36,555 nucleotides of DNA from Octopus bimaculoides (Eukaryota), in assembly GCF_001194135.2 (NCBI RefSeq), contig NC_068996.1, forward strand, positions 18,539,589 to 18,576,143. Reading direction: 5' to 3'. Position numbers and translations under genes: made by a program. A model generated the notes under the pieces. It worked only from the letters and a program-made list of their open reading frames with translations, had not been told where the DNA came from and searched no databases. Below are positions 1 through 10,691 of this stretch, one piece after another. The stretch's first letter is position 1. The number at the start of each line of letters is the position of its first letter.

Positions 1-38
<38 letters not shown>

Positions 39-80
39 TATATTGTATATGTATATGTAATGAATGTGTGTGTGTTTATA

Positions 81-1170
81 TGTAGAGAAGGAATTATATT
101 TGCGAACACTCAATTTATCAGAATTATCAGTGTTTTAAAAACCAATGAAAAGGTTTCTTATTTCTTTTGGATGCCACATGTCTGATAAAATTGTAACATA
201 AGAAATTAAAAACCATGCAGTCATTGATGCCATATGTGTTGAACCCTCTTAACGTTCGGACACTATAAGGAAACAGCAATTCATCCAACGGGTTCAAAAA
301 GGGTTATCGATGGTGGTCCAGGAAAATCAACGAGGGCCATTACCAGAGAACTTCCAGTGTCGGAGTAGACTATCAGAACTGTGATGCACAAACATGTTCG
401 AAACAAATTGTATTTATTGAGGAAAAACCAATTCGTGTCTACAAAGACAGGAAAATTTTGATCTGTATCAAGCTGTTACCTAAGGTTTAAAGCCTTACGT
501 ACATGGAAGTCTGGTGAGAAAATCTTTGACCAACACTTGAAGGAGAAAAGACAGATGCCTATGTGCAGATATTTCTGATGTCTCCAGAGTGATGCACGCT
601 AATTTTTCTACAAATCTGATGATTTTAGAAGTGTTGAATAATGAAGGTCATGTCACCACAGATCTTTCCATAGGTTTTTAGAATTAATGCTGCCGGATGT
701 GTTGAGGTACTGTAATGAATTGTGTCTTGGATGGGATGAAGCGTGCAGTGGAAGGTGTACGTTTTTCGAACAAGACTCAACATCTCACAAAACTCAAGTA
801 ACCCAAGATTGGATGTAACGATAATCTTTATGATCATATAGCAGTAAATATGTGGCCACCAAACTCGACAGATATAATCCCATGGGCTACGAAATTAGGT
901 ACATTGTGAATGGGAAACTAATCAACATCCTCACTATACCATGGCGTCACTAAAGGCCGCCATTGCCCAGGTGATGTCCAAAAATATGTAAAGGATATTT
1001 AGTGCAGGAATGCCATTGATTCCTGTCCCGCATAAAAGGAATCATAGAAGCCGAAGCTCGATTCAAGATAGTTTAGGGAGGATATGGGTACAATAATTTT
1101 TGGAAATGGGTTTTTGCTAGATTAGCGCTGTTTTATTAATTACGTTCTCAGATACTTTTCATGTCCTGTA
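81..1170 (+). mobile_element. Degenerate Tc1/mariner DNA transposon (probably DD37D/maT-like), near full length
   Basis: Frameshifted transposase motifs: NNEGHV..IF..GFRINAAG.VEVL (~630-715), F(E)QDS..H..QVTQDW (~763-815), MWPPNS.D.NPM.Y (~850-890), ETNQHPH.TMASLKAAIA (~915-970). Right end ...ACTTTTCATGTCCTG|TA at 1169-1170; gapless 16/28 match of this end to 81-108 as a decayed left TIR. Confidence 0.8.
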
Positions 1171-1465
1171 TATATACAATTCCCATACACGCTCGCAGTC
1201 ACGTGATATGTATATATTATAAAAATGTTCGAATTTTAGTTATCATTTTAAAGCGTCAAATACTTTAAAAGGCATTCAAATTAACAACGGAAATTTACAG
1301 ATGCGAAGTGATTTACTGAGAGATTTTGTCAAATTTATTGGAAGATTTGGGTGGGTTTCGATTTTTCAAGTTTCACCTGACAACAGCATTTCACACAAGA
1401 CCAGATTGCATAAGTCGACTGGGAAAATATAACGTCACAAACAGCTAAAAATTCTGTGTGTGTGT

Positions 1466-1516
<51 letters not shown>

Positions 1517-2031
1517 NNNNNNNNNNNNNNNNNNNNNNNNNNNNNNNNNNNNNNNNNNNNNNNNNNNNNNNNNNNNNNNNNNNNNNNNNNNNNNNNNNNN
1601 NNNNNNNNNNNNNNNNNNNNNNNNNNNNNNNNNNNNNNNNNNNNNNNNNNNNNNNNNNNNNNNNNNNNNNNNNNNNNNNNNNNNNNNNNNNNNNNNNNNN
1701 NNNNNNNNNNNNNNNNNNNNNNNNNNNNNNNNNNNNNNNNNNNNNNNNNNNNNNNNNNNNNNNNNNNNNNNNNNNNNNNNNNNNNNNNNNNNNNNNNNNN
1801 NNNNNNNNNNNNNNNNNNNNNNNNNNNNNNNNNNNNNNNNNNNNNNNNNNNNNNNNNNNNNNNNNNNNNNNNNNNNNNNNNNNNNNNNNNNNNNNNNNNN
1901 NNNNNNNNNNNNNNNNNNNNNNNNNNNNNNNNNNNNNNNNNNNNNNNNNNNNNNNNNNNNNNNNNNNNNNNNNNNNNNNNNNNNNNNNNNNNNNNNNNNN
2001 NNNNNNNNNNNNNNNNNNNNNNNNNNNNNNN

Positions 2032-2069
<38 letters not shown>

Positions 2070-2394
2070 GTTTATATATATATGTGTTTATATATATGTA
2101 TATGTTTATATATATGTATATGTTTATATGTATGTATATATGTTTATATATATGTATGTGTTTATATGTATGTATATGATCATATGTATGTATATATGTA
2201 TATAGAAATGTATATATTGATATATGCACTCATATAAACACATATATGTGTATATAAACATATAAATGCATATATATTTGTGTATATATACATATATGTT
2301 TGTATTATGTGTATATATGTTTGTGGTTGTGTGTTTGTATGTGTATGTACATCTTTGTGTGTGTGTGTGTGTGTGTGTGAATATAATTGTATAA

Positions 2395-2454
<60 letters not shown>

Positions 2455-2499
2455 GTATCTATACGTGTGTGTGTGTGTATAAATTTATACCTGTATATA

Positions 2500-2530
<31 letters not shown>

Positions 2531-2779
2531 GCAATGGGAGAAGAGACGGAGAGAGATAGAAAGGAAAAAGAAATACATTATACATGTCTAATGTGCCTGT
2601 GTGTTTACACTCACGTACGCACTCTTCATGCACGTATATATTTTCGTATATGTATGTATATACATATTGAGTGCTGCAGAGGTAACACCCTTTTTTTTTT
2701 TAATGCTGCAAAGTTAATTCTGTCCGAGTTGGGAATCAGAATTATATATATTTGCAACAGGTTGGTGCGCTGCTCCAAC

Positions 2780-3143
2780 ATAGATTAAGCGTTCAGGAAC
2801 GGTTAGAGGTTAATTTTGATCGAAGTCTGTTAGGACAACATTGCCACCACGATCACCACCTGACTTTTTCATCTGGACTATACTCAAAGATGTTTATAAC
2901 CTCAAACCGAAAACAATTCCTGAAACAAGGAATTTCTGTGATGTGTTAATAGGGCTCAGGGTTGTATTGAACACGAAAGACAGCCTTTTGAAGATTTTAA
3001 TTAGTTTGATAATCGTAACAGATCTTGTTTTTATAAGACACTATTTATAAATCTTCTTAAACTACTGTAATTATTTTCATTTGATTGAAGTTATTATATA
3101 CAAAAAAAAAAAAAAAGGCGTTACTTTTTGCCGTAGCCTGTAT
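2780..3143 (+). mobile_element. Tc1/mariner transposase C-terminal relic with probable right terminus
   Basis: Translation PPRSPPDFFIWTILKDVYNLKPKTIPE resembles WPPRSPDLTPxDFFLWGxLKxxVYxxKPxTIxELK; sequence ends ...TTTTTGCCGTAGCCTG|TA near 3141-3143. Confidence 0.65.
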
Positions 3144-3278
3144 AGTTATACATATTCATACAGTAACACATCTATAACACAGTTATTGAGATATAAGTAT
3201 CCTCTGCGTGTGCGTGTGTGTGTGTGTGTGCACGTAATAAGTATATATAGGGAAATATATTTTCTACGTATAAACATT

Positions 3279-3314
<36 letters not shown>

Positions 3315-3491
3315 CTAAATGTTCATATAAATACATATTTGTACATAAATATTTTATTGTTTGATAGAAACCTATTGAACTAATGTGGTGTATATGTGTG
3401 TGTGTATATGTTTCATGCATACATACATGTATATGTATAGATACACATAAACGTTTGTATTTGCGTTAATATACATACACACACATATGGT

Positions 3492-3597
<106 letters not shown>

Positions 3598-3988
3598 ATA
3601 TATTTGTATATGTACATATGTATGTGTATATGTTTGCGTGTTTGGAGTGTGTATATATTGCAATGACTCTTGCGAAGTACAGTTTATTATTCCTGGTTTT
3701 CGATTCATACCTTCGAACGCAACAAAAGAAATTGCTTAAGTTTCTCTTCTTTTTAAACTTATTTACTCAAAGATTTTGTACCTTGACATGTGTGTTGTAA
3801 GTGGCCCAGAACATCTTCCATTGTAACGAATAATCCCCAGTGTATTTTTGTGTGTAGTTATGTATTAAATGTGTGTGTGCATTCGTACGTGTGTTTGTGC
3901 ATATATGTGTGTGTGTATTTGTATTCGGAGATGGTTATAGTTTTTGCCAATCAATCACACGCAGTATATATTCGTTCTTCACTTCAGC

Positions 3989-3994
3989 TTTATT
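3989..3994 (-). promoter_or_regulatory. Candidate distal poly(A) signal AATAAA of mab-21
   Basis: First exact AATAAA on the minus strand after the stop, about 33 nt past the long hairpin. Confidence 0.35.
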
Positions 3995-4026
3995 ATTATT
4001 GTTATTCTTATTCTTATTTCAGTGTC

Positions 4027-4167
4027 CTTTGTGTGAAACCTTTCGTCACGCATCCTGTGACCTCTTCAACGGCATTCCATCTCACGTTCTGTTCAGTCCA
4101 TTCTGTCAGTGAGATAAATTGTCGCTGAAGAGGTCACAGGATGTGTGACGAAAGATTTCACACAAAG
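4027..4167. repeat. Long inverted repeat: 59-bp gapless stem (4027-4085 with 4109-4167), 23-nt loop
   Basis: Paired positions sum to 8194 along the whole stem; 52/59 Watson-Crick pairs. Confidence 0.95.
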
Positions 4168-4228
4168 TTGCTATAATAATGATAATAACAATAAAGTTGA
4201 AGTAAAGAGCGAGTATACAATGAGCGTG

Positions 4229-4234
4229 TTTAAT
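4229..4234 (-). promoter_or_regulatory. Candidate proximal poly(A) signal ATTAAA of mab-21
   Basis: First AATAAA/ATTAAA hexamer I find on the minus strand after the stop; U-rich sequence on both sides. Confidence 0.35.
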
Positions 4235-4407
4235 TAGCAAACAAAAAAAAAGAAGAAAAAAAGAAAAGAAAAAGACCATCCCCAAATACAATATCAACAC
4301 ACGATTTCACATCAGGAATCTTGCAAAACTTAGCTAACCCTATTTCTCTAAACTGCAGATGGAAGCACCGGCGGTCACCAGTCAAATTTCACGTAAATAC
4401 ATAAACG

Positions 4408-4485
<78 letters not shown>

Positions 4486-4912
4486 ACTAGTGTATAACTT
4501 TTAACTCGTAATGTATGCATTATTATATAGGCGATCTTATCCAGTTGTATTAATAATACTAATAATTCTTTACATTGACGACCTGTATAGTAGGGAAAGG
4601 GGAAAAGATTTGATTGTGTAATGCTGTGATGATAATGATGTTGGTAGTAGCAAGTTTTCCTATGTGACAACAACAGTAACAGAAACAACAACAACAACAA
4701 CAACAACAACAATAAATAGTAAATTCATAATAAATAAGAGTTGTAGTTGTTGTAATTATTATTAATAATAATAATAGTAGTAGCATCGTATCAAATGAAT
4801 GTAATTAACGATGATCATTAGAGGTTGTTAAATGAAAACAAGTGACCATAAATATTAGTTGTTTTGTGTGGCGTGTGTATGTTTTCTGTTTATGTGTTAA
4901 TGCTTTTTTCCT

Positions 4913-6016
4913 CTAGAGTTTTTCCAAGCTTCTCGGATTAGTTAACAACTCCCTGAGAATTCTCCACACTTGTTTAGCAGCGCTATCCATTGCTGATGGA
5001 GATCTGCCTTTAAAAAGGTCCAAGTTTGGAAGAAAATAATGCGGACACCTCCGATTTTGTAGACACGAGATCAATTGCAGGAGAATACCGTTAATTCTGT
5101 CCCCTAAACATGTATCGTCCCACTCCACTTCTCTCGGGTGTTTTTCACACTCGTACAGCAGTAATGTCTTCATGTGGTAATTTGTGATGGGCTGACTGGG
5201 TAGCTCCAAGTGTCGGTCTCTCATTGCTTTTAGTATACTCAAGCACTTTCTTCTGCACCCACCACACAACAGTCTGTCTTCAGCGTATTTAAACGACATC
5301 ACCCACGCGTCACCCTCAGCTGCCGATTGTTTGTCTTTCATGTAAATACTTTCCTTGGATAATAGATCAAATCCTTCGGTTTTCACTTCAGCTATTAAAT
5401 TCGGGCTTGGCCACGGTATATGAGGGACAGGCCAGTGTGCTGCGCTCCGTGACCATATGCCCCCGCAACGAAAGGCCGGTGTTATCTGCACTACATACCT
5501 TTCTTTGATACGTAACTTCACCTCTGTGGTATCGGCAACCATTTTCACAACCTCTCGGTAACTGCACTTGTCCACTGCCTGCGCCACCAGTGTTTGGAAC
5601 CTTGAACGTATTTTCCTTGCTGATAGGTATCCGGAAGCAGTAATGAATTCGACCCAGAGTGACATGGACCGTTTACGACCGTCACTTAATTTCAACACGG
5701 CACAACCAGGTATAGTTCCATCGTCTACAAAATTAAAGACGCCCATTTGGTTTAGATATAGAACGACTTCATATTCTGTTGGTGATATAACTTCCATACC
5801 TTCATATCGACCTGTGTTCGATTCGTTCAAGGAGCTTATGAAGCGAGGCTCTTGTACTTCAACCTCTTTCAGAACGTCCTGTACTACTTTGCACACCTCT
5901 CTTACCGTCTTAGCAATGTTAGCCTTTCGTGTTTGTACACGTTCATTATAATACTTGTTTAACTGGAAAAGGAGTTTTGATTGTGCAGCCATCATATCTG
6001 ATCCTTCGAGTAACAT
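4913..6016 (-). CDS. mab-21: Protein mab-21-like (MAB21L1/L2 orthologue; cGAS/MAB21 nucleotidyltransferase fold), 367 aa from first ATG or 360 aa from ATG at 5995
   Basis: Uninterrupted ORF with hallmark MAB21L sequence: MMAAQSKL..LNKYYNER, KEVEVQEPRFISSL, YEGMEVISPTEYEVVLYLNQMGVFNFVDDG, LKLSDGRKRSMSLWVEFITASGYLSARKIRSRFQTLVAQA, CEKHPRE, CPHYFLPNLDLF, ending LTNPRSLEKL-TAG. An in-frame TAA lies 16 codons upstream of ATG 6016. MMAAQ (5995) aligns with the vertebrate start MIAAQ (from recall). Confidence 0.98.
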   Translation of the reverse strand: MLLEGSDMMAAQSKLLFQLNKYYNERVQTRKANIAKTVREVCKVVQDVLKEVEVQEPRFISSLNESNTGRYEGMEVISPTEYEVVLYLNQMGVFNFVDDGTIPGCAVLKLSDGRKRSMSLWVEFITASGYLSARKIRSRFQTLVAQAVDKCSYREVVKMVADTTEVKLRIKERYVVQITPAFRCGGIWSRSAAHWPVPHIPWPSPNLIAEVKTEGFDLLSKESIYMKDKQSAAEGDAWVMSFKYAEDRLLCGGCRRKCLSILKAMRDRHLELPSQPITNYHMKTLLLYECEKHPREVEWDDTCLGDRINGILLQLISCLQNRRCPHYFLPNLDLFKGRSPSAMDSAAKQVWRILRELLTNPRSLEKL

Positions 6017-6305
6017 GAGGACAGCTTTTCTGTGGCCTAAGCCAAAATCACAACGATAACCTTATAGGAATTTTAAACCAAATACCTTTAGAAATGGAGT
6101 AATGTTGTTTTACTACTGTAGAAGTAATACAGTAGTAATTTTAAATGGTGGTTACTGGAGGTGGCGGTAGTAATAGTAGTTGTTTGGCGATGTTCTTGAG
6201 TTCACTGGTATAAATTAACGTTTTTAGTGCTTCGCAATGGAAACCAAATTTGATGCAGGGCAATATGGGAAATATTATTACTGCATTTAGATTTTTGATT
6301 TTCCT

Positions 6306-6430
6306 CTATGAAAAAGAAAGATAGGAGTGAAGCGGGCTGGTCCGCTTCCAGTTTGATTTTTCTTTCAATGCCAAAATCAGCTCCAATTCTTAATTATTTT
6401 CACACAAAATTTGACTTGTTCATTCATTAC
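6306..6430 (-). other. Candidate 125-nt intron in the mab-21 5' UTR
   Basis: Minus strand donor AAG|GTAATG at 6430 and acceptor CTCCTATCTTTCTTTTTCATAG|AG ending at 6306. Confidence 0.35.
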
Positions 6431-6916
6431 CTTCGTTTGTTATCTCTTTCTTTCTTTTCTCCTCTCTCTCTCTTTTCTCCTTTCTCTTTTTTTTTGTTTT
6501 TTTTGTTTTTTTTTGCTTCGTCCTTAGGTAATATATGTAATTTATGTAATTATTTCCACAATATGAGACTGGTATTTCTTATCAGTACCACTAGAACCGT
6601 TATTGTTCGGGTTTTGCTTTATCATTGTTTTTGTTTAAATACTTGTGAATGGTACTTTCCGTTTCAAGTGACGTTAAAATGAAATTATTTGTCCCACAGT
6701 TTGTGTTTCTCCTTTTTTAATCTTGAATAATAATGATAAAACTCTATTTTCCGTTATGTGGCACTTGTGTGTGTTTATGTGAAAATATTTTAGTTTTCCT
6801 TCTTCAAATTAAGAACCGTTCGTCCATAGAAGGGAAATTGTTGGCTAGATTGGTGATTGCCTTCTCTTTCAGTCTGACCAAGTAGCAGTATACAACAAAC
6901 ACCGACCAACCGACTT

Positions 6917-6922
6917 AACTGA
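6917..6922 (-). promoter_or_regulatory. Possible initiator (TCAGTT) for mab-21
   Basis: Matches the TCAKTY Inr consensus within a non-repetitive, GC-richer block (6840-7130) with a GA-rich tract further upstream. A 6-mer alone is weak evidence. Confidence 0.2.
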
Positions 6923-7303
6923 CTGCCAGACCAGACAGAACCAAACACTAATAGTAGCACCCAGACGGCTACACTGACACGCCTACCTTGCTTTGCAGTC
7001 CCAGCTAACAACAATGCTTGCTATGTGTATAATACCTATCAGCGAGGGATGATGATAGCTGAGCAGGCACCGACCGAAAGATATGCGTAGTAGGAGAAAC
7101 CTAATGTTGACGACGACAGGGAGTGAGAAAGAATGTAGAAGAGGAAACGGGAAATGAAAGAGAGAGAGAGAGAGAGAGATGAAATAGTGAGGGGGGAGAA
7201 TACAAAGGAAAGAAAAGGGTCGACTCGAAAGGTAGAATTGCCATGAATTTTTGACTGTTATATCTCTTCCCTCAAAATTTCACGTGCATGCTTTCACATA
7301 CGC

Positions 7304-7341
<38 letters not shown>

Positions 7342-7639
7342 CGTGTATGCGCGCGCCTCTCTGTATGTATGTGCATTTGTTTTTTTTTTTTTTGTTTTTT
7401 GTTTTTGTTTCTCCTAGTAATTCTCTGTCGATGCCTTTCCGACCATTCTTCGAGTTGTCGCCAGACAACAAAATATGCATCCGCTTAGACAACAATACAT
7501 GCAACGCAACACAAAAACGCATACATAATCACAGCTATGTGTACCTCTTATAACTGTATAAACACATATACATACACACACACGACTTCCATCTACCAAC
7601 AATACCCAGCAAAATCATTGGGAACGTCAAATCAAGGTT

Positions 7640-7648
7640 GTCTGGGCG

Positions 7649-7705
<57 letters not shown>

Positions 7706-7990
7706 TGTCATTATTATTATTATTATTATTATGTTATTGTTATTTTGCTGTTGTTGTTGTTGTTGCCTTTTTGCTAGTTTTTGTCCGTTGAGACTTTCCA
7801 GCCAATCACAGCTCATATGTAACCACCACACACACACACTCACGCCCTCCCCCTCTCTTTCTCTCTTCTCACGCATATTTCCCCACATTATCACACTTGT
7901 CACACTTCGCTGTCCTTGTCCTCGTCGTTGCATTCATCATCATCATCATCATCGTCATCATCATCATCATCAACATCATCATCATCACAA
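7640..7990. repeat. Compound trinucleotide microsatellites (TTA)n, (TGT)n, (CAT)n
   Basis: Directly visible runs; they explain the poly-L/Y/N/H/S ORFs. Confidence 0.9.
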
Positions 7991-8383
7991 CTACCACCAT
8001 CGCCCCCTTACTATCGTTGTTGTCGACATCATCGGTTTATTCTTTTTTATATTTTCATTTCAATTTTGTTCTCCTTCATCCTCAGCCCCCACCCACACCC
8101 CGCACCATCCGTGACATATTTTCCCCCCCCTGAATTTAAAAAAACAACTACAAAAAAAAACAACAACAAAATAGTGTTTATCTTTTTTCGGTGTTTCTCT
8201 TATTTCTTCTTCTAGATCTCATCCACAATAATTTTATTATTATTATTTTACTTTAATTTTTCACTTTACCCTTACCTTATCCAACATCTGTTTAATTACG
8301 GTATTAAAAACGAGTTAACACCGAAAAAAAAAAAAGAAATCCTCGAAGCCACGCCTACATGCCCCACTCCCTCTTTCTTTCTT

Positions 8384-8433
<50 letters not shown>

Positions 8434-9973
8434 TCTCTCTAGCTCATCCATTTTTGGATTATTTTAACAGACTGCTTGATGCAAAATTCACTTCTCTCAT
8501 CCTCATCAATATTATTATTATATTATTTATTATCACCGTCATATACGTATGTGTGTGAGTGTGTGTGTGTGTTAAAATTTAGTTCCCCCTCATCGAATTT
8601 CATTCTCCTCATCATTCTGTAAAATTAATACATTTTTTTAAAACAAAATTTCGAAGGAATATGTTTTCGAGAATGTAGATTAAGATAATGTCAACATTTT
8701 TTTTTTAACAGGGAGAGCAGCGGGGGTCATTCCGTACCCATGCAGCGGACTCTCATTTCGTTAATTTCCGTAACTTAGAGGTTTGGGTTTTTCAGTCCAC
8801 ATATTTCCCCTTTCGCTCGATTTACGTATGGAACGACCAACATTACGTAATCTATACCCACGAAAGCCTATTTTCTCAAAGTTAAATTTAAAAATATAGA
8901 TTTTAAACAGGGTTATGAGGAAAAGGTTCGAATTGGGGGTGGGGGTCATGAATGATTTACAACTGCTTAGAATTTTCCCTTTCCCCCCACTTTTTGTATG
9001 TCTGTTCCTCTGCATATATCTACTTATAAATGTACATACATATGTGCACAAGTGTGTATGCATATGTATGTGTGCGTGTGTCAGTATTATTTATACGTAT
9101 ATATGTATGTATGTATATATATATATATGTATGTATATATATGTTTATATATACGTATATCTATGTGTATATATATATATGTGTGTATACGTGTGTATAT
9201 ATATATNNNNNNNNNNNNNNNNNNNNNNNNNNNNNNNNNNNNNNNNNNNNNNNNNNNNNNNNNNNNNNNNNNNNNNNNNNNNNNNNNNNNNNNNNNNNNN
9301 NNNNNNNNNNNNNNNNNNNNNNNNNNNNNNNNNNNNNNNNNNNNNNNNNNNNNNNNNNNNNNNNNNNNNNNNNNNNNNNNNNNNNNNNNNNNNNNNNNNN
9401 NNNNNNNNNNNNNNNNNNNNNNNNNNNNNNNNNNNNNNNNNNNNNNNNNNNNNNNNNNNNNNNNNNNNNNNNNNNNNNNNNNNNNNNNNNNNNNNNNNNN
9501 NNNNNNNNNNNNNNNNNNNNNNNNNNNNNNNNNNNNNNNNNNNNNNNNNNNNNNNNNNNNNNNNNNNNNNNNNNNNNNNNNNNNNNNNNNNNNNNNNNNN
9601 NNNNNNNNNNNNNNNNNNNNNNNNNNNNNNNNNNNNNNNNNNNNNNNNNNNNNNNNNNNNNNNNNNNNNNNNNNNNNNNNNNNNNNNNNNNNNNNNNNNN
9701 NNNNNNNNNNNNNNNNNNNNNNNNNNNNNNNNNNNNNNNNNNNNNNNNNNNNNNNNNNNNNNNNNNNNNNNNNNNNNNNNNNNNNNNNNNNNNNNNNNNN
9801 NNNNNNNNNNNNNNNNNNNNNNNNNNNNNNNNNNNNNNNNNNNNNNNNNNNNNNNNNNNNNNNNNNNNNNNNNNNNNNNNNNNNNNNNNNNNNNNNNNNN
9901 NNNNNNNNNNNNNNNNNNNNNNNNNNNNNNNNNNNNNNNNNNNNNNNNNNNNNNNNNNNNNNNNNNNNNNNNN

Positions 9974-10036
<63 letters not shown>

Positions 10037-10234
10037 GCATATGTATATACATGTATATGTATGTATATATGTATAAGTAGATATATGTTTGGATATATGT
10101 ATATATATATATATATGCATATATACATATATCCATATATATGTATGCGTATATATGTATGTATATGTATGTATATATGTATATACATGTGTGTGTGTGT
10201 GCATGTATATCTATATATGTCTGTGTATATATAG

Positions 10235-10395
10235 TTGAATTTTATAAAAAAAAACAAAGACGAAGACAGGTTTATAAAGAATAAGCAGGTGTATTAGTTT
10301 GACGCTCGGGAATGTGAGAAAGTCTTTTACGTTTCGAGCCCATGCTCTTCAACAGAAATGAACAAGAGGAAATAAACAGAGAAGAAGAAAACTTT
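10235..10395 (-). repeat. Short interspersed repeat relic carrying a hammerhead-like motif (possible Penelope-type terminal repeat)
   Basis: Non-microsatellite block between (TA)n tracts; minus strand TTGAAGAGCATGGGCTCGAAACGTA. Confidence 0.35.
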
Positions 10396-10652
10396 GAGAG
10401 CTTACTATGTATATATATATATATATGCATGCATATATATATATGTGTGTGTGTGTGTGTGTATGCATATATATATATACAAAAATATATTTGTATATAT
10501 ACATATGTATGTAGGTATATATTTCTGCATGCTTATATGTGTGTGTGTGTGTGTGTGNNNNNNNNNNTTTGTCAAGTAAAGACACACCGAAACACAGAAG
10601 CTACGAGCGAGCGCCAGAGAAGTGCGCGCAAACAAACACACACACACACACA

Positions 10653-10691
<39 letters not shown>

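What the first reader, a model, noticed from the sequence alone, without database searches (positions are those of the whole stretch)
4027..4167. 59-bp gapless RNA hairpin about 750 nt downstream of the mab-21 stop: candidate ADAR substrate or small-RNA precursor
Seen: 4027-4085 pairs with 4109-4167 without indels (52/59 Watson-Crick). On the mab-21 sense (minus) RNA, four of the seven defects become G-U wobbles (4039/4155, 4069/4125, 4077/4117, 4078/4116), leaving two A-C mismatches (A at 4144 and 4122) and one A-A, so 56/59 are paired. It is unique, high-complexity sequence in otherwise simple-repeat 3' flank, has no second copy in the window and shows no TSD. Established: ADARs favour A opposite C in long duplexes, and coleoid cephalopods edit RNA extensively. 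Inference: a structured 3' UTR module (editing or retention element, or hp-siRNA/miRNA source) on a deeply conserved eye/neural developmental gene.
Basis: partly seen in the sequence, partly recalled or inferred. Interest (0 to 1): 0.75.

Follow-up and report, generated by a model that had tools for sequence, protein, structure and literature searches.

The report
Decayed 300-bp palindrome in octopus intron
The hairpin is real, but it is the best-preserved core of an old 299-bp inverted duplication in an octopus neurobeachin intron beside mab-21; such palindromes look common in this genome, and nothing found here points to a dedicated role.

Summary
Positions 4027-4085 pair with 4109-4167 without gaps (52/59 Watson-Crick, 23-nt loop, z about -15). 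It is incomplete, though. The palindrome runs with two indels from 3943 to 4241 (299 bp) and folds as one long hairpin on both strands (-152 and -145 kcal/mol). The G-U excess on the mab-21 strand is not significant (4:2 in the core, 9:6 overall).

The window is Octopus bimaculoides chromosome CM046616.1. Here mab-21 is nested antisense in a neurobeachin intron, so the plus strand is also transcribed.

The arms differ mainly by transitions (K2P 0.13-0.21), as neutral decay predicts. No Rfam family fits. The hairpin is absent from the mab-21 flanks of Argonauta and a second, distant cephalopod. An unrelated, stronger 200-bp palindrome lies 20 kb away, next to a Tc1/mariner transposase remnant.

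Published work reports abundant inverted-repeat dsRNA and hyper-editing in this genome, and no endo-siRNA pathway in molluscs. The most likely reading is a neutral palindromic repeat that is a generic ADAR substrate when transcribed. Copy number, transcription, editing and conservation within Octopus could not be tested.

The parts
3943..4241 (.). Full imperfect palindrome (299 bp). It folds as one long hairpin on either strand.
   Evidence: Self-BLAST 3943-4241 against 4241-3943, 72.5% over 309 columns, E 5e-46. Local alignment with two indels. No significant extension beyond these ends. Folds at -152.1 kcal/mol on minus (z -20.1) and -145.2 on plus (z -16.5).
3943..4085 (.). Left arm (143 nt). 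The outer part, 3943-4021, is 77-81% matched and contains an ATT-type low-complexity stretch.
4027..4085 (.).
4086..4108 (.). 23-nt spacer, the apical loop of the hairpin
4109..4167 (.). Right arm of the gapless core (52/59 Watson-Crick with the left arm; six transitions and one transversion)
4109..4241 (.). Right arm (133 nt)
4913..6016 (-). Single-exon mab-21 coding sequence (367 aa including the TAG stop). It is context, not part of the palindrome.
   Evidence: ORF. Pfam Mab-21 and Mab-21_C, with 90% identity to molluscan mab-21-like 2.
4229..4234 (-). First AUUAAA after the mab-21 stop (679 nt downstream), inside the outer right arm. Use of this signal would exclude the core from the mRNA.
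3989..3994 (-). First AAUAAA after the mab-21 stop (919 nt downstream), 33 nt past the core. Use of this signal would put the core at the end of the 3' UTR.
   Evidence: It lies in an AAT-repeat context, so it may be a chance match.
1..16016 (+). Range of the annotated 2800-aa neurobeachin gene, which covers this stretch on the plus strand. Locus L001 spans window 1-16016. No neurobeachin exon was found here, so the palindrome is read as intronic.
   Evidence: Gene table of L001: Neurobeachin, DUF4704, DUF1088 and PH_BEACH families, on the strand opposite mab-21, running over both ends of the locus.

Best explanation
The hairpin is the best-preserved central part of an old, neutrally decaying 299-bp palindromic repeat. 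It lies in the neurobeachin intron of Octopus bimaculoides that also houses the nested mab-21 gene.

Origin (inferred): a single inverted duplication. I favour a palindromic non-autonomous DNA transposon (MITE or foldback type) over a replication template switch, at roughly 55:45.

Behaviour (inferred, not measured): the element is transcribed on the plus strand as part of the neurobeachin pre-mRNA. It may also be transcribed on the minus strand if mab-21 polyadenylates beyond 4027. In either transcript it folds into a duplex of about 135 bp with a 59-bp gapless core. Such a duplex would be bound and promiscuously hyper-edited by ADAR, like the many other inverted-repeat duplexes of this genome. 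Editing would destabilise it. It has no dedicated regulatory role in mab-21.
For: - The structure is a real duplication product, not chance.
- The arms differ as neutral decay predicts. There are 15 transitions and 9 transversions over 133 aligned columns, K2P 0.21 overall and 0.13 in the core. The inner and outer parts do not differ significantly in divergence (Fisher p=0.26). Neither strand is favoured for G-U pairs.
- Both strands fold almost equally well, and both are plausibly transcribed because of the nested gene arrangement (Tsang et al. 2009, cited in PMC11511899).
- A second, unrelated and better-paired palindrome (24041-24240, -147 kcal/mol) lies in the same 36.5-kb window. It abuts an ORF homologous to HTH plus DDE_3 (Tc1/mariner-type) transposases. 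Compact palindromes therefore recur here, and one is associated with a DNA-transposon remnant.
- Half the arm-to-arm distance, 0.07-0.10, matches the burst of TIR and Helitron elements at JC distance about 0.09 reported for O. vulgaris (PMC13282606).
- In O. bimaculoides 4.4e-3 of random 50-bp loci have a near-perfect inverted partner within 2 kb, and hyper-editing is exceptionally high. Most octopus editing falls in introns and 3' UTRs, where hairpins are enriched (PMC5625713; PMC9699675).
- No sequence similarity and no comparable hairpin is present at the corresponding place in two other cephalopod mab-21 loci.
Against: - Genomic copy number could not be measured, so a transposon origin is not shown.
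- There is no target-site duplication and no recognisable terminal motif at 3943 or 4241.
- There is no second copy in the window, whereas a SINE-like family has at least six copies there.
- The core is somewhat better preserved than the outer arms (87% against 78%), which is the direction selection on the stem would give, although the difference is not significant.
- The only canonical AAUAAA near the element lies 33 nt downstream of the core on the mab-21 strand, which would fit a 3'-terminal UTR hairpin.
- No RNA data were available, so transcription and editing are inferred.
- The only orthologous loci reached are too distant to test conservation within Octopus.
Confidence: 0.68

Rival explanations
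1. The behaviour is the same (a neutral, generic dsRNA), but the origin differs. On this reading the palindrome is a single-copy local inverted duplication made by replication template switching or fold-back repair, not a transposon.
For: There is no target-site duplication, no terminal motif and no second copy in the window. The short 23-nt spacer is typical of fold-back events. Template switching is a documented source of hairpins (PMC10710096 and PMC8794818).
Against: Documented template-switch hairpins are mostly tens of bases long, not arms of about 140 nt. The neighbouring palindrome is associated with a DNA-transposon remnant. The age of the arms matches a TIR-element burst. Terminal features of a transposon this diverged would have eroded in any case.
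Confidence: 0.3
2. The hairpin is a selected cis-element of the mab-21 3' UTR. It recruits ADAR or dsRNA-binding proteins to control nuclear retention, stability or translation of mab-21 mRNA.
For: It lies 672-886 nt after the stop, with no AAUAAA in between, and the first AAUAAA comes 33 nt after the core. The minus strand folds slightly better: -94.5 against -92.2 for the core, and -152 against -145 for the whole element. Inverted repeats in 3' UTRs are known to cause retention of edited mRNAs in mammals (established knowledge: IRAlu elements, CTN-RNA).
Against: The strand asymmetry is not significant. An AUUAAA at 4229-4234 could end the mRNA before the core. No counterpart exists in the Argonauta locus or the other cephalopod locus. 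The mismatch pattern looks neutral. The same sequence is intronic to neurobeachin on the other strand. A comparable palindrome 20 kb away has no link to mab-21.
Confidence: 0.08
3. The hairpin is a small-RNA precursor, either a miRNA or a hairpin-derived endo-siRNA locus.
For: A long, near-perfect hairpin is the substrate type of Dicer. Weak sub-threshold hits to plant-type long miRNA models (MIR2934, 38.6 bits) reflect its shape. Palindromic MITEs have given rise to miRNAs elsewhere (MADE1 and miR-548, established knowledge).
Against: No Rfam family reaches its gathering score: 38.6 bits against 100 for the best hit, and none anywhere in the window. The 59-bp stem continues into a duplex of about 135 bp with no basal single-stranded junction, so it does not fit the roughly 35-bp pri-miRNA geometry that Drosha requires (established knowledge). 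A survey that included O. bimaculoides found no siRNA-type Dicer or Argonaute and no endo-siRNA signal in molluscs (PMC12479628). Only about 162 miRNA genes were accepted for this species, and each had to be conserved in O. vulgaris (PMC9699675).
Confidence: 0.04
4. The palindrome is an assembly artefact, a fold-back chimera.
For: Palindromic chimeras do occur in some sequencing and assembly workflows.
Against: Artefactual fold-backs are near-identical. Here the arms differ at 12-22% of positions and by two indels.
Confidence: 0.01

Closest known systems
Palindromic MITEs that fold on their own into hyper-edited dsRNA, for example the Harbinger-derived repeats of Xenopus tropicalis (PMC5625713)
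   Same: Both are compact (200-300 bp), non-coding and self-complementary, so one copy forms a tight duplex without a partner. Both lie in non-coding transcribed DNA of a genome with very high hyper-editing.
   Different: The Xenopus elements are a defined multi-copy family with measured editing. Here copy number, termini, target-site duplication and editing are all unknown or absent.
Inverted SINE or Alu pairs in mammalian 3' UTRs and introns (IRAlu elements, mouse CTN-RNA)
   Same: Both are long intramolecular dsRNAs in an intron or 3' UTR. Both are ADAR substrates with possible effects on nuclear retention or stability.
   Different: Those duplexes form between two separate copies of an abundant retroposon. 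This is one contiguous palindrome with a 23-nt loop and is unrelated to the SINE-like family in the window.
Drosophila hpRNA loci (endo-siRNA hairpins)
   Same: Both are long inverted-repeat hairpins encoded in the genome.
   Different: hpRNAs need a Dicer-2/AGO2 pathway, which was not found in molluscs (PMC12479628). hpRNA stems are usually longer and have identifiable target genes.
MADE1 and the miR-548 family; hairpins made by template switching that become de novo miRNAs (PMC10710096)
   Same: In both, a hairpin is created in one step by a palindromic transposon or by a replication error.
   Different: Those hairpins are of pre-miRNA size (about 80 nt or less). This duplex is several times longer and has no basal junction.

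Membership tests
MITE or foldback-type non-autonomous DNA transposon | Small size (<800 bp) and no coding capacity | tested here: met
   299 bp. The only ORFs across it are low-complexity, and a six-frame query found no protein relative.
MITE or foldback-type non-autonomous DNA transposon | Terminal inverted repeats | tested here: met
   The whole element is self-complementary from 3943 to 4241.
MITE or foldback-type non-autonomous DNA transposon | Target-site duplication flanking the termini | tested here: not met
   The flanks GGTTATAGTT (3933-3942) and CAAAAAAAAA (4242-4251) share no direct repeat. The ends are 20-25% diverged, so erosion is possible.
MITE or foldback-type non-autonomous DNA transposon | Multiple dispersed copies in the genome | not testable with these tools
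   No octopus genome can be searched by DNA. The protein-level proxy found nothing, but a control with an abundant SINE-like repeat found only one protein, so the proxy has no power.
Animal miRNA precursor | Stem of about 35 bp with single-stranded basal flanks and a hairpin of about 60-80 nt | tested here: not met
   The 59-bp gapless stem continues into a duplex of about 135 bp.
Animal miRNA precursor | Match to a curated miRNA family | tested here: not met
   The best hit is 38.6 bits against a gathering score of 100. Nothing reaches gathering score anywhere in the window.
Animal miRNA precursor | Stacked 20-26-nt reads with 2-nt offsets | not testable with these tools
   No small-RNA reads are available. 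The supplements of PMC9699675 that are held contain no miRNA sequences.
hpRNA / endo-siRNA locus | Long inverted-repeat hairpin | tested here: met
hpRNA / endo-siRNA locus | The host has a dedicated siRNA Dicer and Argonaute and detectable endo-siRNAs | tested here: not met
   Literature only: none were found in 32 molluscs, including O. bimaculoides (PMC12479628).
ADAR hyper-editing substrate (inverted-repeat dsRNA) | Near-perfect intramolecular duplex longer than about 30-50 bp | tested here: met
   56/59 paired on minus and 54/59 on plus, counting G-U pairs.
ADAR hyper-editing substrate (inverted-repeat dsRNA) | The element is transcribed | tested here: inconclusive
   It lies inside the annotated neurobeachin gene range on the plus strand. 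No RNA data were available, and the mab-21 poly(A) site is unknown.
ADAR hyper-editing substrate (inverted-repeat dsRNA) | Clustered A-to-G mismatches between RNA and DNA | not testable with these tools
   No RNA-seq access.
Conserved mab-21 3' UTR element | Lies between the stop codon and the poly(A) site in use | tested here: inconclusive
   Candidate signals lie on both sides of the core: AUUAAA at 4229-4234 and AAUAAA at 3989-3994.
Conserved mab-21 3' UTR element | Present at orthologous loci | tested here: not met
   No similarity and no comparable inverted repeat in L002-L011 (98% amino-acid identity, 80% nucleotide identity in the CDS) or in Argonauta L012. Congeneric octopuses could not be reached.

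The most novel reading that the evidence does not exclude
The palindrome is kept by selection as a two-way dsRNA module of the ancient nested pair mab-21/neurobeachin. On this reading the same 59-bp core sits at the very end of the mab-21 3' UTR (poly(A) signal at 3989-3994) and in the host intron. ADAR editing or dsRNA-binding proteins would then couple, or insulate, expression of the two overlapping genes in neurons.
Probability: 0.05. Interest if true: 0.55.

Novelty: new member of a known kind. Interest (0 to 1): 0.15.

Why it matters
If the ordinary reading holds, the locus is one more of the many inverted-repeat duplexes behind the high background of hyper-editing in octopus transcripts, and it needs no special attention. 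It would matter only if congeneric genomes showed compensatory maintenance of the stem, or if RNA data showed a defined mab-21 3' end with site-specific editing. That would give a rare example of a structured element shared by a deeply conserved nested gene pair. A practical point for the scan: in this genome a long, high-complexity hairpin is not an unusual signal by itself, because an independent and stronger one lies 20 kb away in the same window.

Tried and rejected
- **Closer orthologues.** I searched for Octopus orthologues of the locus through the protein index. The mab-21 clusters held no other Octopus species, and look-ups with alternative start codons found nothing. Only a distant cephalopod (L002-L011) and Argonauta (L012) were reachable. 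Their flanks share nothing with the window.
- **Copy number by proxy.** A chimeric six-frame translation of the hairpin core searched against 5.8 billion proteins gave 0 hits. A control with the consensus of an abundant SINE-like repeat from the same window gave only one hit, an O. bimaculoides gene model. The database therefore barely samples octopus non-coding DNA, and the negative result says nothing about copy number.
- **Exact-pattern DNA scans.** Scans of metagenome and viral contigs gave 0 hits, as expected for an animal sequence.
- **Wider palindrome.** An apparent further extension (about 3907-3927 against 4272-4291), seen by eye, scored no better than shuffled sequence and was dropped.
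- **Logan contigs as transcript evidence.** The 3.3-3.5-kb Logan contigs of the related cephalopod begin and end in microsatellites or A-runs. They come in long series of runs, so they look like genomic contigs broken at repeats and cannot be used to infer UTR length.
- **miRNA lists.** The supplements of PMC9699675 that are held contain k-mer and target tables but no miRNA sequences or coordinates.
- **Neurobeachin exons.** A scan of open frames found no obvious exon in the window. The intron assignment rests on the annotated gene range.

Full report
**Observation.** Arms 4027-4085 and 4109-4167 are 59 nt each, gapless and 88% complementary, with 23 nt between them. As minus-strand RNA the core has 52 Watson-Crick pairs, 4 G-U pairs, two A:C mismatches (A at 4144 and 4122) and one A:A. 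It folds at -94.5 kcal/mol against -36.5 for dinucleotide shuffles (z -15.6, 0 of 200). The mab-21 ORF is 4913-6016 on the minus strand (367 aa). Its TAG stop is 746 nt from 4167. No other copy exists in the window.

- The gapless core is only the centre of a larger palindrome. With two indels the complementarity runs from 3943 to 4241, giving arms of 143 and 133 nt. It goes no further: the sequence beyond scores below shuffled controls. The whole 299-bp element folds as one long hairpin.
- The fold is nearly as good on the plus strand. The core gives -92.2 against -94.5 kcal/mol, and the full element gives -145.2 against -152.1.
- Six of the seven core defects are transitions. Every transition gives a G-U on one strand and an A:C on the other. 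The 4:2 split in favour of the minus strand has p=0.34. Over the whole palindrome the split is 9:6 (p=0.61).
- So the sequence gives no sign of which strand matters, if either does.

**Genomic context.**
- The mab-21 protein maps to Octopus bimaculoides assembly GCA_001194135.2, chromosome CM046616.1, at about 18.53-18.56 Mb.
- The gene table shows a 2800-aa neurobeachin gene (Neurobeachin, DUF4704, DUF1088 and PH_BEACH families) on the opposite strand, spanning the whole 21-kb locus. The same arrangement is annotated in Argonauta hians.
- This is the known, conserved nested pair Mab21-Lrba/Nbea (Tsang et al. 2009, cited in PMC11511899).
- The palindrome is therefore intronic to neurobeachin on the plus strand, whatever its relation to mab-21.
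It has four A:C mismatches (A at 4069, 4116, 4117 and 4155), three of them with a 5' A or U. The minus strand has two, in 5'-CAC and 5'-GAC contexts.
- Whether the core lies in the mab-21 3' UTR is open. On the minus strand there is no AAUAAA between the stop and the element. An AUUAAA sits at 4229-4234 in the outer right arm. The first AAUAAA is at 3989-3994, 33 nt beyond the core and within an AAT-repeat context.

**Mode of evolution.**
- Across 133 aligned arm columns there are 15 transitions and 9 transversions. K2P is 0.21 overall and 0.13 in the core.
- The core is a little better matched than the outer arms (8/60 against 16/73 mismatches), but not significantly so (p=0.26). This is what two neutrally drifting copies look like.
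- With the O. vulgaris repeat clock (JC 0.09 about 25 My, 0.2 about 56 My; PMC13282606), half the arm distance (0.07-0.10) gives roughly 18-29 My. That coincides with the reported burst of TIR and Helitron elements.
- It is also of the same order as the O. bimaculoides/O. vulgaris split, put at 13-33 My in that paper and about 50 My in PMC9699675.
- The divergence between the arms rules out a fold-back assembly artefact.

**Comparison with other loci.**
- The protein index yielded a cephalopod with 98% amino-acid and 80% nucleotide identity in the CDS (L002-L011), and Argonauta hians (L012; 89% and 73.5%).
- Neither shares any sequence with the octopus 3' flank, and neither has a comparable inverted repeat at that position. 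Argonauta has its own unrelated 36-bp inverted repeat 317 nt after the stop.
- The hairpin is thus not a deep feature of cephalopod mab-21. These species are too distant to say anything about constraint within Octopus, and no congeneric locus could be reached.

**How unusual is it here?**
- A complexity-filtered scan found a second compact palindrome at 24041-24240. It is 200 bp long and 87% self-complementary, and its outer 55 nt are 95% paired. It folds at -147 kcal/mol on plus and -130 on minus (z -23.6), and it is unrelated in sequence to the first palindrome.
- It abuts a 104-aa minus-strand ORF (24243-24554) with 460 homologues at E<=1e-3. Full-length homologues carry HTH_23/HTH_29, HTH_Tnp_Tc3_2 and DDE_3 domains, that is, they are Tc1/mariner-type transposases. 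The ORF stops at the palindrome boundary.
- Compact palindromes therefore recur in this intron, and one is tied to a DNA-transposon remnant.
- Porath et al. reported that 4.4e-3 of random 50-bp loci in O. bimaculoides have a near-perfect inverted partner within 2 kb. That figure was computed without a low-complexity filter, so it is an upper bound for high-complexity hairpins. They also reported that this species has exceptionally high hyper-editing, and that editing across Metazoa falls mostly in repeat-derived duplexes (PMC5625713).
- Zolotarov et al. found most octopus editing in introns and 3' UTRs, where hairpins are enriched (PMC9699675).

**Small-RNA readings.**
- No Rfam family reaches threshold on the hairpin (best 38.6 bits against 100) or anywhere in the window.
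- The stem continues into a duplex of about 135 bp with no basal single-stranded junction. This does not fit Drosha-type processing (established knowledge).
- A survey of 32 molluscs including O. bimaculoides found no siRNA-type Dicer or Argonaute and no endo-siRNA signal (PMC12479628).

**Copy number.**
- A six-frame protein proxy for the hairpin found nothing.
- The same proxy for a SINE-like repeat with at least six copies in the window found a single protein, so the negative result is uninformative.
- Exact DNA scans of metagenome and viral collections were empty.

**Verdict.**
- The best-supported account is a neutral, decaying palindromic repeat in the neurobeachin intron and mab-21 flank. 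I lean towards a MITE-like origin over a template switch.
- It would be promiscuously edited whenever it is transcribed, with no dedicated role (confidence about 0.68).
- A selected mab-21 3' UTR element remains possible (about 0.08), and a small-RNA source is unlikely (about 0.04).
- Interest is low unless congeneric alignments or RNA data show otherwise.

Noticed in passing
window 24041-24240: A second compact palindrome: 200 bp, a stem of about 96 bp, outer 55 nt 95% paired. It folds at -147 kcal/mol on plus and -130 on minus (z -23.6). It is unrelated to the finding and stronger than it. AT/TA dinucleotides sit at both ends, but they are part of the palindrome's own symmetry.
   Followed up: partly
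window 24243-24554 (-), possibly continuing to about 25115: A 104-aa ORF that ends exactly at the second palindrome. It has 460 homologues (best E 5e-25), and the full-length ones carry HTH plus DDE_3 (Tc1/mariner-type transposase) domains. The ORF itself matches nothing in Pfam and gives only E=0.25 to the Sleeping Beauty transposase in the PDB. About 80 C-terminal residues seem to be missing where the palindrome begins.
   Followed up: partly
window 11393-11801, 17205-17583, 33845-34102, 33330-33435, 23354-23486, 11138-11252: A SINE-like dispersed repeat of about 280 bp with an internal microsatellite. At least six copies or fragments are present at about 70-75% identity. No tRNA-like head was detected by ARAGORN.
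   Followed up: partly
L012 7469-7581 (Argonauta hians): The mab-21 3' flank of Argonauta has its own 36-bp, 86%-paired inverted repeat 317 nt after the stop. It has no sequence similarity to the octopus hairpin.
   Followed up: no
window 1-16016 (+) and L012: mab-21 is nested antisense inside a neurobeachin gene in both O. bimaculoides and Argonauta hians. This extends the known Mab21-Lrba/Nbea nested pair to octopods.
   Followed up: partly
window 4242-4276: An A-rich tract (A runs interrupted by G) immediately follows the right end of the palindrome on the plus strand. It could be a retroposon-type tail or just low complexity. No flanking direct repeats were found.
   Followed up: no
window about 10560, 11300-11390, 28020, 28870-28940: Runs of N (assembly gaps), seen as X in translations.
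   Followed up: no
L003-L011: About 130 Logan runs hold 3.3-3.5-kb contigs of a cephalopod mab-21 locus. All are bounded by a (GATA)n repeat about 85 nt before the ATG and by an A-run or (CA)n about 2.2 kb after the stop. The species was not identified.
   Followed up: no
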